This document shows, in pieces, positions 16,627 through 22,831 of a stretch of DNA of 64,000 nucleotides. The notes under the pieces were generated by a model. The model saw only the letters and a program-made list of their open reading frames with translations, was not told the DNA's origin and did no database searches. Source of the DNA: Trichoplax adhaerens (taxonomy: Eukaryota > Animalia > Placozoa); contig NW_002060946.1 in assembly GCF_000150275.1 (NCBI RefSeq), positions 3,243,454 to 3,307,453 of the forward strand, written 5' to 3'. Each line of letters begins with the position of its first letter. Positions within the stretch are counted from its first letter, which is position 1. Position numbers and translations under genes: made by a program.

Positions 16627-18263
16627 AAAGTGAAAGAGAATTAGGTAAAATGTCTCACGTGATATAGGACTTGAAATTTCATCCTAGTATATATTACTAC
16701 ATTCGTAAGAATAGAAAATAATTTTAAATTCTACATGATAAATCACTACTTACTTAAATACTACGAGATGCTACTTATTACGAATAGCATATTGTACTAG
16801 ATCTGTCACTGCTTATTTAGTATTATTATTACTTCTTTCTATAGGAAATTTGTATCAGTAAAAGAAATAGCAAGTCGAAAAGCCGAAACTTTTCAATGAA
16901 TTTCTGAATGATATTCTATTTGACAAATACAGTATATTTTAACTATTGAGATATACACGTAATAGCTAGCTTTCTTGATACCTTGTCAAGCAGTGAGACA
17001 TTTACCATTTTTACTTTAACTAAAAATTACAATTTTCGATAGTTACTTGTATGAATGATTGATTTGGCTGCTAATTGATTTCAAACTTTATTTTATGTGA
17101 TGATATCCTGTTTAGAGTTTAAGTCTTGTCCTGCAATGAAATTTGCATGATCGTGCTTGTTGCGATGAAAATTGGTTTCAATTTTGCATAATCATTTCAT
17201 TTGTAGTTGTAATGAACTTTGAGTAGCGATTAATATTGACTTAAAATCAATGCTGATTTATAAATTATTAACCATGATCTTAAATTTTACTTGAATCATT
17301 GGATAATTCAGCTTCTACTTCTAACGTTGGCATTGCCTTGCCTTTTTCAGCTGTATTTAAAACTATTGTTTCTGCTTGTTTTTGTATTTTTGATGACAGA
17401 TAGGCGTAAAGAAGTGTTCTATCAACTTTAGTATTACTATAAATTTTAGATTATAGTAGTAATGATATCTTCGATTCTGACTGCAGTAGATGTCAAGATA
17501 ATTTTAATTGTTGATTAATAAAATGTCCGCTTTCTACTAACGACTAATTGTGAACGAGATTGTTAGAAGGTTGACTGTTGTATCAATGCTAACATGCGAT
17601 AGGCGAGAGTTTCGATAGGGCTTTGAAATCATTTTATGATATAATTTCTATATTACCAAATCCAAATTGTAAAGTAAGTAATAATGCTAATTTTATTTGT
17701 AGTCCTATATTTACATTGCATGCTGTAGCGATAGTGTTGATGCTACACTTGCTACAGTTAGGATAGGCTAAATGACATTTATCGTTAACTTACATATTAT
17801 ACCCGTACGTTCACTGTAGATAGTTAAGCCCGAAATTGTATCGTATAATATAAGTAAATATTTCGCTTTAATCTAAAAGCTATGCAAGAAGAATAGTAAA
17901 GTTGAATTTGTTGCTATCGGTAGATATTTTTCAAAAATGAAAAAGTGCAATACATTTTATATTCAACTCTATTGTAGTGGTTTACATTGTAATTCTTCAT
18001 GATATCACACATTTTTTTGTACATTAAGAATAGATAACTACTCCGTAGCTAATTTTGAAGAGGAAATAACCTTCTTCGTCAAAGACTAAGAGGGTAAATA
18101 TTAAGAAAGAGCTTAATGTATCATAAAGAGGGCCACAATTAGAAAAAGACAACAAGTTAGTGCAGTTGGTGGCAAATGCTGTCGCCAACACCAGATGGTA
18201 TCAAAGTATAGCCTCTTAATTTAATGTTCGTCATGTGTCTTGTGGAAAGTGCTCATCTTCGCG

Positions 18264-21200
18264 CTACCAGAGATCGTCCGATTTGTTAAATATTTTGCTA
18301 TATGCCAATATAGTCAAGTAGACGATTACGGAGCCACCAAGTATTAATCCCATAGCACCAGGTTGAATCTATTCAATTAAATTGACAGTGATGTTGATAT
18401 GCGCATTCAATGATTGTAGTTAGAACTGAATTTGTGTTATTCCGTGAATTGCTGTATTAAGATGGAATCACGATACGGTAACAATTACTTACAATCTTAG
18501 TGTGAGCCAAAAGCATAGGAAATGCTGTAGGATGATGGTAAGAATGGAAAGATGCATTAGTGGTAGCAAATTTCCTCAAGTATTTGTATTGTGATGACGG
18601 TTTAGTTCATAATAAGAGTTGAAAGTAAAAATATTATTAGCCAGTACTTACCAAAACCTGAAGTGACAAATACCGCGGTGCAGTATATTGCTATATCCTT
18701 ACCAACACTATCGAAAGGAATAAGAGTACCGCAGCAGTTAAATGATGTTATTACCAGGTAAAATTGCTCTAGACACATTTGATATCATTTCTCATTTATT
18801 CAGGTTTATTGTTGATGAGAAGTAATGCTCTACCATATGGTCTACCGTCATAATTGCTGTGATATCGTACAATGTCACTATAACTCGAGAAAGTTGGAGC
18901 AAGTTCAAGTTTATTGTATGCATAGACTTTGCCTAGTAACAGTCCGCTAATTCAACTATACTCTGCAAAGTGAAAGATATCAAGATGTACTCTTGCCTGG
19001 TGCAGTATATCCATCAGTGTCAATAGTAGTATGAATATCACATACGCATACAGTAATATGGTTACGTTATAGTTAGTATCGTCTGCTGTACAATCTATAT
19101 TCATCTCTATTTTTACTACACTACGACCATAAACAATTATGAAATACTGTATGTCCAATTTTATCACCCAAATGGCAAGATTTTTTATACACATCGATCG
19201 ATGGTACGCGTAGAAAGATTAATTTCTTGGTAAAGTAAATTACTGTTAGTAAGTGATTAAGTTAATGGACATCTTTTTGAAAAGAATCGGTAACTAGAAA
19301 GTAAAGGCGTCGATAGTATCAAAGTATCGTCATGGACATTGATTACATGATCGTACCCGCTCTCCGTGCCAAAATCCCCTTGAAGTCGATTAGCAATCAT
19401 GATGGGTATCGGTGCCAAGACATAAAAGATAACTGTGGTTGAAAAGAATCATTAATTCTATCTCTGTATCTAATTAATTCTATATTAATGTATGTAGTAT
19501 ACTCAATACGCTGATATAAGAATATCATAGCAATGTAGCCATTCCATAAGTCCTTTCCTACCGCTTTTGACATTCACTTACCGATAAACATAGGCCACCA
19601 ACAACTAAAAAATATTGAAGAAAAAGAGAATGAATGACGATGTTATAACTTTGTAATAAATTTTTTATTAGCATAACAATTATTTAGCGATCGTTGTTCT
19701 AGGCAATCAAGCCATTTCTCAATCATCCTACGATCATTAAGCAATCAATCGATCGTATTCTCTTCATTTTACAATCAATCAATTGAATCTTTGACTAGTC
19801 AAAATTATCGGTACTTACTCATATTCAGGTAATGCACATCCGAGGACATCCAAGAGGATACCACAAGCGAATGAAAACGTAATTGCGACAAGGCTAGAGT
19901 AGGGAAGAAAAAATAAGGGAATGAATTTAGCAAAACGGATGTAGAAGCCACAGTATTTCAAAGTCATTATAAGTCACTGTTTGTCTATGATTGTATAGAG
20001 AGGATCAATACATCCTTTCCAACGTAAACTAAAGTCGAGATATCACTACAGAAGGGTAGTCCGGTTTTAATGTTAAATTTATTATCGATTGCATTGCTAA
20101 TCGATAATGTTTTGGATGGGCCATTTTGTCCATTACGTCATCGTGCTACTTTTACTGGTACTGGTAGTACCAGTCATGGTAACGCGGTTTGACTTCTGAT
20201 GCGGCATTTCCATACACAACATTAGACTAGGACATTGCTCTTGATTGACTATGCATCACGCAATCGCGTTCAAGACGTCACAATCGAAGTTAAAGAAAAG
20301 GATTTGTAGGCTTTAGGATTGACAGTGGAGACGATCGAATGGCGATCAAATTGTAAGGCATACAAGCAAAAGAACAGATGATTTGAACTGATCAAGGGCA
20401 GAATAGGAATAGAGTCTAGTTTCGGACTGTAGATACTGTCTTGGATGGTATCAATGAAGTCTGCTCGAGCCGATTTGTAATGGTGTATTGACAGTGAAGA
20501 TGGCTAAATGACGGCCGAGTTTCAATGCATACAGCCCAGTACAAGCAAAAGAATGGATGTTTTGAAAGTGATCAAGGATAGTAGTAAATAGGAATAAAGT
20601 GTCGGTAAGGACGCCATGTACCATCTTTGATGGCATCCATGGACTTGACTACAACTGATTGAAATGGCCATGATTATAATGAACAACTTACGCTGGTGTC
20701 GCAATTCAATCAAAAGGATGCAACAAGAGGACAAGAACCCGATAGGATCGACGTCCAGTAGGAATGGATACCCAATACATCGTCGCAGTATTATCCCATA
20801 GCGATCATATTAGAATGGGGATAGAATGAAGAGAAATTGAATTAGTATGATGTATACCGTGTAAGAAGAGAATTGGATTTGAACAAAATTCACCTGGCGT
20901 CGTAATTCAATCCAAAGGATGCAACAAGAGGACAAGAACCCGATAGGATCGACGTCCAGTAGGAATGGATACCCAATACATTGTCGCAGTATTATCCCAT
21001 AGCGATCATATTAGAATGGGGATAGAATGAAGAGAAATTGAATTAGTATGATGTATACCGTGTAAGAAGAGAATTGGATTTGAACAAAATTCACCTGGCG
21101 TCGTAATTCAATCCAAAGGATGCAACAAGAGGACAAGAACCCGATAGGATCGACGTCCAGAAGGAATGGATACCCAATAAATCGTCGCAGTATTATCCCA

Positions 21201-21311
21201 TAGCGATCATATTGGAATGGCGATAGAGTCAAGAGAAATTGAATTAGTATGATGAGTACCGTGTAAGAAGAGAATTGGATTCCAACAAAATTCACCTTTA
21301 ATTCCTGCCAT
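18264..21311 (-). CDS. LEPROT: Leptin receptor gene-related protein / Vps55 family (LEPROT/LEPROTL1)
   Basis: Exons 21311-21296, 20692 (1 nt), 19893-19819, 19604-19582, 19432-19357, 18707-18652, ~18525-18491, ~18369-18264. They give MAGIKALVAITFSFACGILLDVLGCALPEYDCWWPMFIVIFYVLAPIPIMIANRLQGDFGTESGVGKDIAIYCTAVFVTSGFAFPMLLAHTKIIQPGAMGLILGGSVIVYLTILAYSKIFNKSDDLW*, collinear with the LEPROT/LEPROTL1 four-TM family. Confidence 0.93.
20693..21295 (-). repeat. Three tandem 201-bp units, each a complete GT...AG intron
   Basis: Units 21295-21095, 21094-20894 and 20893-20693. On the minus strand each begins GTGAATTTTGTT and ends ...CCAG; the units differ by a few substitutions. Confidence 0.92.
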
Positions 21312-21685
21312 ACTGTAGAGGTTGTTGTTGTTGTGGAAGAATGATGATGATCGATCGACGAGATGCTGAAGGTTAACGGTCTAGTCGAGGGGTGCCGGGG
21401 CTGCTCATAAATGACACTTGATTGTGGTGCTGTCCGTCCGCTCGTCCACGCAAGCCTGTGCTGTACTGCGCAGTGTACAGCAGCAGTGCTGAATTCAAGC
21501 TACTGTACCGGACCGAACCGAACCGTTCTGATCTGGACTGTCCTGCTCGTTTGTTTACCAACTAGAGAGAAAATTTTTTTTCCAGGTACAAGTCTGCTAT
21601 TGTTCTGGTCCAGGGCGACATGGGTTTTGCGCAGAGAAAGTTGTTGAGACATTTTGGGGAGTGAATTATACAGGTGTAGTACAGC

Positions 21686-22130
21686 AGAGTGACTACATGA
21701 AGTTAGGTACCCTTAAGAGATGATTGGCAAAAGCCAATGGAAATGAATTTTTCAAGTGTCTTGTTGATTCCTAGTCATGGCTGGGGCATTTTTTCACGAA
21801 ATGATGACATAGTGTACCCCAGGTATAGTATAGTATCGTAGAGTGACTACGTGAAGTGAGGTACCCTTGAGAGATTTGTACTCTTAAGCAAATGGAAATA
21901 AATTTTTCAAGTATCTTGTTGATTCCTAGTCATGGCTGGGGCATTTTTTCACTAAATGATGACATAGTGTACCCCAGGTATAGTATAGTATCGTAGAGTG
22001 ACTACGTGAAGTGAGGCACCCTTGAGAGATCATTGGGATAAGCAAATGGAAATGAATTTTTCAAGTGTCTTTCCACACATCCTGTAATGTTCGCTAGTGG
22101 CTTAGTGACAGTGGTGACCCTTGAGAGATC
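21686..22130. repeat. Tandem repeat, ~154 bp unit, ~2.6 copies
   Basis: 'agagtgactac.tgaagt.aggtaccctt.agaga...aatggaaat.aatttttcaagt' starts at ~21686, ~21840 and ~21994. Confidence 0.85.
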
Positions 22131-22831
22131 ATGTTTTGCAATCATTTTACGAGTGGAATCTCTACTTGCTCTCCGCTTCAGGGAACATTCTCATTTTTGA
22201 GTCAGCCCATTTTCTCCTCCATTTTATACCGTTGTATGACGTTTTACAAGTGCTACTGTATAGTATACAGTGTCGTACACAGAGGCAAGCTAGCAGGTGA
22301 CATTATTTGTAGGCAAAGAGCCCCTCTCTTGTGCTGGTTCCATTGCACAACAAACCATGTTAAAATACATGCCTGTAGAGTGTGTGTGTGTACTTATGCT
22401 ATATGCATGAATAGATGTTGTTTTATCGCAATTGATTTTATAAATTCAAGTTTTATCCTTCAATTGGCCTTCTTCCGTTGCATGGAAATGAAGAAATGGA
22501 ATCCATTTTGCAAGATTGGAACATCATTTCCAAGGCCTAGCTACTAGTCTACTTTGGCACAAGAACAAGATTTTGATGGACACCTCCAATGTCTGTCCGT
22601 CCAAAAGAAAGATGGTACAGGCACTGTATCAAGACAGGAAGATGGCCGATATTGGACCCTCTTTACCCCATTTTCCCATGGGTATTGTATGCTGTTGAAA
22701 GTGTGGAAAGGGACAGTCTTCTACCAAATACTGCTTTGCAATTGTTTTTCTTTGTAATTAATCATTCATTCTCATCTGCTGACGTCATGACCCCGAGTCA
22801 GCCATAACAACCGACCCTCGTCATCAGCCCA

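What the first reader, a model, noticed from the sequence alone, without database searches (positions are those of the whole stretch)
20686..20700. Probable single-nucleotide exon in LEPROT/Vps55
Seen: exon 1 (21311-21296) reads ATG GCA GGA ATT AAA G|gt (phase 1). The next obvious exon starts ...ctctag|C CTT GTC GCA (19893) and needs phase 2. Direct joining frameshifts, and no other AG lies near that acceptor. At 20692 on the minus strand there is a pyrimidine-rich tract...CCAG|C|GTAAGT, an acceptor and a consensus donor separated by one base. Including it gives G+C+C = GCC and the reading MAGIK-A-LVA. Known: human LEPROT begins MAGVKALVA and LEPROTL1 begins MAGIKALIS, so the 1-nt exon restores the conserved residue. 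One-nucleotide exons are extremely rare; Arabidopsis APC11 is the classic case, and I recall a plant VPS55-family 1-nt microexon report that should be verified. Inference: a constitutive 1-nt exon in an early-branching animal, which gene predictors would miss.
Basis: partly seen in the sequence, partly recalled or inferred. Interest (0 to 1): 0.93.

Follow-up and report, generated by a model that had tools for sequence, protein, structure and literature searches.

The report
Real one-nucleotide exon in LEPROT/Vps55
A single C between two introns is spliced into the mRNA of a placozoan LEPROT/Vps55 gene, and the same three-part layout appears in DNA from ant-, termite/cockroach- and clam-like animals and others, so this looks like an old, overlooked one-letter exon that gene predictors get wrong.

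Summary
Confirmed. The minus-strand gene at 18264-21311 is a Vps55/LEPROT homologue (Pfam PF04133, 124 bits on the public model).

- **Frame problem.** Exon 1 ends in phase 1 at 21296. Exon 2 starts at 19893 and needs phase 2.
- **RNA evidence.** RNA-run contigs from two studies join the two exons with exactly one extra letter. It is G on the + strand, so C in gene sense.
- **No assembly error.** Unspliced contigs from four runs show the reference sequence at the acceptor and at 20692.
- **Unique source.** The only AG|C|GT site in the 1402-nt span is 20692 (CCAG|C|GTAAGT). It restores Ala6 of the conserved N-terminus MAGIKA.
- **Public models are wrong.** RDD43207.1 and XP_002111961.1 both carry invented N-termini.

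Two further findings:
- **Not placozoan-specific.** In 36 genomic metagenome contigs (20 sequence groups) exon 2 again starts one base before its first full codon. YAG-N-GTAAG lies upstream at 0.70 per kb against 0.025 per kb background. Ten groups show the full layout: exon 1 (MAGI[KR]+G), one nucleotide, exon 2.
- **Known in plants.** Plant VPS55 has a published 1-nt microexon in the same phase. Whether it sits in the same codon was not tested.

The kind is known. I found no report of one in an animal nuclear gene.

The parts
21296..21311 (-). Coding part of exon 1 (ATG to AAAG, phase 1). The 5' UTR continues upstream; its start is not resolved.
   Evidence: RNA joint ends at 21296 (table 5). 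Contig X4 record 21 runs 21296-21788.
20693..21295 (-). Intron 1a, 603 nt. It is exactly three 201-nt GT...AG units (GTGAAT...CCAG). The unit junctions at 21095|21094 and 20894|20893 are AG|GT sites.
   Evidence: TRF reports period 201, 3.0 copies, 96% matches. Alignment. The unit occurs nowhere else in the genome. Flanks show no homology to the unit.
20692..20692 (-). One-nucleotide exon, C. It is the second base of codon 6 (G-C-C, Ala).
   Evidence: The extra letter is G on the + strand in the joints 19893-21296 and 19893-21095 of runs X10 and X4 (table 5c). It is the only AG|C|GT site in the span.
19894..20691 (-). Intron 1b, 798 nt, GTAAGT...CTCTAG.
   Evidence: It is retained in partly spliced contigs (X7 record 28, X4 record 19, X10 records 12-13).
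19819..19893 (-). Exon 2. It starts with the third base of codon 6, then Pfam Vps55 positions 1-23.
19582..19604 (-). Exon 3 (23 nt).
   Evidence: Joints in X10, X4 and X7.
19357..19432 (-). Exon 4.
   Evidence: Joints in X10, X4 and X7.
18652..18707 (-). Exon 5.
   Evidence: Joints in X10, X4 and X7.
18493..18524 (-). Exon 6.
   Evidence: Joints in X10, X4 and X7.
18264..18368 (-). Exon 7, coding part with stop TAG. The 3' UTR continues downstream.
   Evidence: Pfam PF04133 hit on this exon in the genome search.
20137..20177 (-). Invented first exon of the public Trichoplax sp. H2 model RDD43207.1. It lies inside intron 1b.
   Evidence: No RNA joint to it in the four runs.

Best explanation
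The C at 20692 is a genuine spliceosomal exon of one nucleotide in a Vps55/LEPROT-family gene.

The pre-mRNA has two canonical GT-AG introns separated by that single base. Intron 1a is 603 nt, GTGAAT...CCAG. Intron 1b is 798 nt, GTAAGT...CTCTAG. Removing both gives AAAG-C-CCTTG, so codon 6 is GCC (Ala) and the protein starts MAGIKA followed by the first transmembrane helix.

A one-base exon cannot be recognised by exon definition. The two introns must therefore be removed one after the other by intron definition (inferred). There are two possible orders:
- Upstream first. This creates AAAG-C|GTAAGT, a regenerated 5' splice site, as in recursive splicing but leaving one base behind.
- Downstream first. 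This leaves CCAG|C-exon 2 as an ordinary 3' splice site.

The perfect intronic donor GTAAGT right after the base makes up for the lack of exonic pairing with U1 (inferred).

The arrangement is probably inherited, not a local accident. The same exon 1 / one base / exon 2 layout is present in genomic contigs of many other animals.
For: **Shown**
-, tables 5 and 5c: joints 19893-21296 (X10 depth 11.3, X4 depth 293.6) and 19893-21095 (7 and 103.1) each hold one letter, G on the + strand, that fits neither side. Both flanking intron bases are C on the + strand. The letter is therefore gene-sense C and cannot come from a shifted site.
-, tables 3, 4 and 8: unspliced contigs of X1 (DNA-like), X4, X7 and X10 cover 19893/19894. 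X1, X4 and X7 also cover 20692. No insertion or deletion is listed at either place.
- 20692 is the only AG|C|GT (or GC) site in the span. YAG-C-GTAAG is expected 0.0005 times.
- the C restores MAGIK-A-L. KAL is the commonest form of this motif among the 120 relatives that carry the conserved Cys motif. Pfam Vps55 position 1 is the first full codon of exon 2.

**Comparative**
- 36 genomic contigs in 20 groups have the exon-2 acceptor one base before the first full codon. 26 of 32 with at least 300 nt upstream hold YAG-N-GTAAG, at 0.70 per kb against 0.025 per kb background.
- ten groups show exon 1 MAGI[KR]+G|GT (MSLFQGIR+G in L035), one base, GTAAGT (GCAAGT in L035), then exon 2. The codon is GCN in eight groups, GAA in one and GGC in one.
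- AGCGTAAGT is an invariant island in eight diverged introns.
- contig-derived ORFs identical over the first 23 exon-2 residues of L016, L046 and L047 start MAGIKA or MAGVKA.
Against: - The RNA evidence comes from assembled contigs, not raw reads. Levels, rare C-less forms and the order of intron removal cannot be read from them.
- No contig shows only intron 1a removed. A form with only intron 1b removed is not excluded, because the second joint may be exactly that.
- Placement of the second joint (21095, 20894, or a copy-3 allele) is ambiguous, because only 20-27 letters lie on its shorter side.
- The strand of the letter in table 5c is deduced by logic, not stated by the tool.
- The comparative loci come from unnamed organisms and have no matching RNA.
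Confidence: 0.9

Rival explanations
1. The extra C does not come from 20692. It arises from non-canonical splice sites, from insertion or editing at the RNA level, or from an artefact of contig assembly.
For: Only contigs were laid, not reads. No contig showing only intron 1a removed was listed.
Against: - The same letter appears in two runs of two studies and in two different junction contexts.
- Shifting either site by one base would give G, not C.
- A canonical AG|C|GTAAGT site exists exactly once.
- That site is conserved as an invariant island in other animals.
Confidence: 0.04
2. The reference lacks one base at the exon-2 acceptor or at the exon-1 donor, through assembly error or strain polymorphism. 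The gene would then have one ordinary intron.
For: The window comes from an older draft assembly (my inference from its size and contig count). Single-base errors do occur in such assemblies.
Against: - Unspliced contigs from X1, X4, X7 and X10 cover 19864-19930 with no insertion at 19893/19894. The only nearby insertion is a T at 19930 in X4.
- Contigs X4 record 20 and X1 record 5 cover the donor at 21296 without an indel (tables 4 and 8).
- X4 and X10 hold both the spliced form with C and the unspliced form without an extra C.
Confidence: 0.02
3. The real first exon is elsewhere, as in the public models: a phase-2 exon inside what I call intron 1b, or far upstream. The MAGIK exon would then be a minor or non-coding start.
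For: RDD43207.1 and XP_002111961.1 use other first exons. Many relatives have isoforms annotated with other N-termini.
Against: - The only joints into exon 2 in the RNA runs come from 21296 and 21095, both with the C. None comes from 20137.
- The invented N-termini have no counterpart in relatives, whereas MAGIKA is the family consensus.
Confidence: 0.03

Closest known systems
Plant VPS55 1-nt microexon (cluster 2 of Yu et al. 2022, PMC8831610; also Zygnema, PMC11096116)
   Same: - Same protein family (Pfam Vps55).
- One-nucleotide exon near the N-terminus, in phase 1.
- Preceded by a very short coding exon 1: 19 nt of CDS in plants, 16 nt here.
- Donor after the base conserved as GTRAGT in plants; GTAAGT here and in most of the animal contigs (one GTAAGA, one GCAAGT).
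- Missed by genome annotation, which gives wrong N-termini and a lost first helix.
   Different: - Different kingdom.
- In plants it is described as arising in streptophytes and as alternatively retained in some lineages.
- Whether the split codon is the homologous one could not be tested, because no plant sequence was reachable with these tools.
Arabidopsis APC11 single-nucleotide exon (Guo and Liu 2015, PMC4674806)
   Same: Constitutive 1-nt exon between two GT-AG introns. It was found because the cDNA held one base more than the annotated exons. Sequential removal of the two introns was proposed.
   Different: Unrelated gene. Proven there by mutating the base in reporter constructs, which has not been done here.
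Fusarium CYP621A one-nucleotide exon (PMC12940212)
   Same: A phase-1 exon cannot be joined to a phase-2 exon, an AG-N-GT site is conserved in the intron, and SRA transcripts support it.
   Different: Fungal P450 gene with short introns. Conserved only within one genus.
Zero-nucleotide recursive splice sites (Drosophila Ubx and other long introns; cited within PMC4674806)
   Same: Juxtaposed 3' and 5' splice sites inside a long non-coding span. The 5' site is regenerated after the first step. The AG|GT junctions between the three 201-nt units here have exactly that form.
   Different: At 20692 one base stays in the mRNA. Intermediates were not resolved here.
Placozoan mitochondrial cox1 single-base exon (Osigus et al. 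2017, PMC5436844)
   Same: Same group of animals. A single C is left between two introns, and it was first mistaken for something else (RNA editing).
   Different: Mitochondrial, flanked by self-splicing group I introns rather than spliceosomal ones. Unrelated gene.

Membership tests
Spliceosomal one-nucleotide exon | Mature RNA holds one base that is contiguous with neither flanking exon in the genome. | tested here: met
   tables 5 and 5c: one letter between 19893 and 21296 in X10 and X4.
Spliceosomal one-nucleotide exon | That base lies in the intervening DNA directly between an AG acceptor and a GT donor. | tested here: met
   CCAG|C|GTAAGT at 20692, the only such site in 1402 nt.
Spliceosomal one-nucleotide exon | The genome sequence at the flanking splice sites is correct. 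| tested here: met
   unspliced contigs of four runs match the window at 19893/19894, three of them also at 20692, and two at the 21296 donor.
Spliceosomal one-nucleotide exon | Changing or deleting the base changes the mRNA accordingly. | not testable with these tools
   Needs a minigene or genome edit, as in PMC4674806.
Vps55 / LEPROT / LEPROTL1 (Pfam PF04133) | Match to the family profile above the curated cut-off over its whole length. | tested here: met
   - P0001 scores 124.1 bits (cut-off 24.6) over profile positions 1-120.
- P0001 residues 15-135 are the products of exons 2-7. Searches check exons 2 and 7; I read exons 3-6.
- Exon 2 alone gives 18.6 bits on positions 1-23. Exon 7 alone gives 21.5 bits.
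Vps55 / LEPROT / LEPROTL1 (Pfam PF04133) | Conserved N-terminus of the animal members (M-A-G-[ILV]-K-[AG] before helix 1). | tested here: met
   It is met only when the C is included.
Recursive (ratchet) splicing | Stepwise removal through a regenerated 5' splice site, with detectable intermediates. | tested here: inconclusive
   - a second joint (19893-21095 plus C) and contigs with intron 1b retained exist.
- Contigs cannot give the order of the steps.
Same exon as the plant VPS55 microexon (positional homology) | The split codon aligns with the plant split codon. | not tested
   - Only indirect: both are phase 1, after 16 and 19 nt of CDS (PMC8831610, Suppl. Table 5).
- No plant sequence could be fetched.

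The most novel reading that the evidence does not exclude
The one-nucleotide exon is orthologous across animals. It would have been present before placozoans and bilaterians split and kept since in ant-, termite/cockroach- and bivalve-like animals and other, unplaced ones. It would have been lost by fusion to exon 2 in lineages such as the one behind L008/L009, whose exon 2 most resembles sea-anemone proteins by eye. That would make it the oldest and most widely kept 1-nt exon known in animals. It may even sit in the same codon and phase as the plant VPS55 microexon, which would raise the question of an origin before plants and animals diverged, or of repeated gain at one site.
Probability: 0.6. 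Interest if true: 0.9.

Novelty: new member of a known kind. Interest (0 to 1): 0.82.

Why it matters
- **Rarity.** One-nucleotide exons are documented for plant APC11 and VPS55 and for a Fusarium P450. In the open-access library searched I found none for an animal nuclear gene.
- **What this adds.** RNA supports one in a placozoan. Sequence evidence suggests the same exon is kept in several bilaterian phyla.
- **A natural test case for splicing.** It shows how the spliceosome handles an exon too small for exon definition. There is a consistent signature: a perfect GTAAGT after the base and weak, variable exon-1 donors.
- **Annotation.** It would explain the odd or truncated N-termini of many public LEPROT/LEPROTL1 gene models. 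Only 20 of 83 named models have the canonical start, against 28 of 36 contig-derived ORFs. Such errors remove the first membrane helix.
- **Intron evolution.** The match with plant VPS55 in family, phase and distance from the ATG makes a question about deep intron conservation directly testable.

Tried and rejected
- **Mobile-element origin of intron 1a.** The 201-nt unit occurs only at this locus.
- **Partial fourth repeat copy or hidden copy of exon 1 in the repeat.** Local alignments of the unit to both flanks are at shuffle level.
- **Paralogue in the genome.** The PF04133 search found only this gene's last exon; the tool notes that counts are lower bounds.
- **Reaching plant VPS55 sequences.**
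  - The profile search listed only opisthokonts in its best 120.
  - The Atlas search gives no sequences.
  - The plant paper's alignments are images.
- **Exon-7 search.** The search of the representative library found only the Trichoplax cluster.
- I redid it from locus coordinates.
- **Irrelevant scan.** The bacterial promoter/terminator scan does not apply to a eukaryote and is disregarded.
- **Joined model not searched.** Searches used single exons by reference or database proteins returned by tools.

Full report
**The locus.** The minus strand of 18264-21311 carries a seven-exon gene plus one extra base.
- Its last exon matches Pfam Vps55 in the whole-genome search.
- The exon-7 peptide finds one cluster in the 1.84-billion-protein library. 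Its members are RDD43207.1, 'Leptin receptor gene-related protein [Trichoplax sp. H2]', and XP_002111961.1, TRIADDRAFT_55514 of T. adhaerens.
- The 135-aa model scores 124 bits on PF04133 over the whole profile.
- The assembly has 105,631,681 bases in 1414 contigs. From memory, that fits the published T. adhaerens draft.

**The observation.**
- Exon 1 is ATG...AAAG followed by gtgaat, and ends at 21296 in phase 1.
- The next exon starts at 19893 after ctctag. Its family-like reading frame starts one base in.
- One base is therefore missing.
- On the minus strand 20696-20686 reads CCAG C GTAAGT.
- AG-C-GT (or AG-C-GC) occurs once in the 1402 nt between the exons. YAG-C-GTAAG is expected 0.0005 times per shuffle.

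**RNA evidence.** I found runs that hold the stretch and laid four of them, from four studies, on 17800-22300.
- X10 is on record as RNA. X4 and X7 behave as RNA, with spliced joints. X1 behaves as DNA, with even depth over introns and no joints.
- Joints in X10, X4 and X7 reproduce every border of exons 2 to 7.
- Two joints leave exon 2 upstream: 19893 to 21296 and 19893 to 21095. Both are in X10 and X4.
- Each joint has exactly one letter that lies on neither side, given as G (table 5c).
- The + strand bases next to the joint (19894, 21295) are both C. A gene-sense G would simply have been aligned to one side. The letter must therefore be a + strand G, which is C in gene sense.
- This rules out a donor or acceptor shifted by one base, which would give Gly (GGC).

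**Assembly error is excluded.**
- Unspliced contigs cover the acceptor: X1 record 2, X4 record 19, X7 record 28 and X10 record 12. The first three also cover 20692.
- X4 record 20 and X1 record 5 cover the donor.
- None has an insertion or deletion listed at these places (tables 4 and 8).
- X4 and X10 hold both the spliced form with the C and the unspliced form without an extra C.

**The second joint.**
- 21095 is the last base of the first 201-nt repeat unit.
- This form therefore keeps at least one unit and uses the GTGAAT donor at a unit junction. Alternatively it is a transcript with only intron 1b removed, from an allele whose third unit ends like the others.
- Only 20-27 letters lie on the shorter side, so I cannot tell these apart.
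- Either reading places the C directly after a CCAG.
- If a unit is kept, the frame hits a stop within it (my reading). The form is then either unproductive or an intermediate that can still lose the unit, which is itself a complete GT...AG intron.

**Intron 1a.**
- It is exactly 3.0 copies of a 201-nt unit at 96% matches. This agrees with the scan's note s1-801023.
- The unit is found nowhere else in the genome.
- Its flanks show no homology to it.
- A complete intron has therefore been triplicated in place. The cause is unknown.

**Public models.** Both Trichoplax models lack the MAGIK exon.
- The H2 model uses an invented exon at 20137-20177, inside intron 1b.
- The T. adhaerens model has a 45-residue N-terminus, upstream of the exon-2 product, with no counterpart in relatives.
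- No RNA joint supports the invented H2 exon; the pieces of the T. adhaerens N-terminus were not located in the window.

**Family context.** A profile search gave 361 relatives, of which the best 120 were listed.
- In the 120 proteins that carry the conserved Cys motif, the three residues spanning the split codon are most often KAL (24) or KGL (14).
- Many ORFs from assembled contigs start MAGIKA.
- Only 20 of 83 named gene models have such a short canonical start, against 28 of 36 contig-derived ORFs.
- A further 34 named models are long/odd or start inside exon 2.
- That pattern is what widespread failure to model a 1-nt exon would produce. Real alternative first exons cannot be excluded.

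**Other animals.** This gave 56 loci, some cDNA-like and many genomic.
- In 36 genomic loci (20 groups at 93% identity of exon 2) the acceptor AG lies exactly one base before the first full codon, as in the window.
- YAG-N-GTAAG occurs 27 times in 38.6 kb upstream of exon 2 (0.70 per kb). Elsewhere in the same loci it occurs 7 times in 285 kb (0.025 per kb).
- 26 of 32 loci with at least 300 nt upstream have the motif.
- Ten groups show the whole layout: exon 1 MAGI[KR]+G followed by GT (MSLFQGIR+G in L035), one base, GTAAGT (GCAAGT in L035), then exon 2. The codons are GCN in eight groups, GAA in one and GGC in one (read directly in L046 and L055).
- The donor after the single base is GTAAGT in these ten groups, apart from the GCAAGT of L035. 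The exon-1 donors are weak and variable. The window follows this pattern, with GTGAAT against GTAAGT.
- In eight diverged introns of one lineage, AGCGTAAGT is the only run of invariant columns.
- By identity over the first 23 exon-2 residues, named models place three groups: L016/L048 next to ants (Nylanderia), the L047 group next to Blattodea (Diploptera), and L060 next to the bivalve Mya.
- Contig-derived ORFs with the same residues as L016, L046 and L047 start MAGIKA or MAGVKA.
- Two kinds of locus (L008/L009 and L018) have only the phase-1 intron, and exon 2 starts with two bases of the split codon. That is what loss of the second intron would leave.

**Mechanism.**
- Shown: the mRNA contains the C, and the only canonical source is 20692.
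- Inferred: the two introns are removed in succession by intron definition. The perfect GTAAGT substitutes for missing exonic pairing.
- X7 record 28 has introns 2 and 3 removed but intron 1b retained, so 1b can be late. The order relative to 1a is unresolved.

**Literature.**
- One-nucleotide exons are described for Arabidopsis APC11 (PMC4674806), plant VPS55 (PMC8831610; Zygnema in PMC11096116) and Fusarium CYP621A (PMC12940212).
- Placozoan mitochondrial cox1 has a single-base exon between group I introns (PMC5436844).
- Plant VPS55 cluster 2 is phase 1 with coding blocks of 19, 1 and 52 nt and a GTRAGT donor. The animal gene is phase 1 after 16 nt.
- No paper in the library links LEPROT, LEPROTL1 or endospanin with microexons, or reports a nuclear 1-nt exon in an animal.
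- The library covers open-access papers only.

**Limits.**
- Contigs, not reads, were laid.
- The comparative loci are unnamed and lack matching RNA.
- The plant comparison is untested.

Noticed in passing
window 20693-21295: Intron 1a is an exact in-place triplication of a complete 201-nt GT...AG intron. It is unique in the genome and shows no flank homology. The unit junctions are AG|GT sites, and RNA suggests a junction donor is used.
   Followed up: partly
window 21686-22000 and beyond: A second tandem repeat (period 155, 2.0 copies within the scanned range, 90% matches) lies upstream of the gene. RNA and DNA contigs break there.
   Followed up: no
L048, L023, L046, L049, L053, L055, L060, L035, L030, L032: Consistent asymmetry of donors: the site after the single base is GTAAGT (GCAAGT in L035), while exon-1 donors are weak and variable (for example GTTATT, GTATTC, GTGATA). 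The window has the same asymmetry.
   Followed up: partly
L019, L020, L024, L027, L030, L032 (alignment A3): In this lineage a CTGAY-like branch-point motif lies only about 8-10 nt before the acceptor of the single-base exon. A TG-rich, partly conserved element lies 30-60 nt upstream.
   Followed up: no
L008 78-86: A locus with only the phase-1 intron still holds an AG-C-GT string inside that intron. It could be chance or a relic.
   Followed up: no
proteins P0004-P0122: Many named gene models of insects, molluscs and a brachiopod have long, odd or truncated N-termini, whereas contig-derived ORFs start MAGIKA. Some 'KG' starts in models could come from a donor shifted by one base.
   Followed up: partly
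window 18152-18184 and 20267-20292: Runs X4 (organism A) and X10 (organism B) share a block of variants against the window. The labels therefore do not separate haplotypes at this locus.
   Followed up: no
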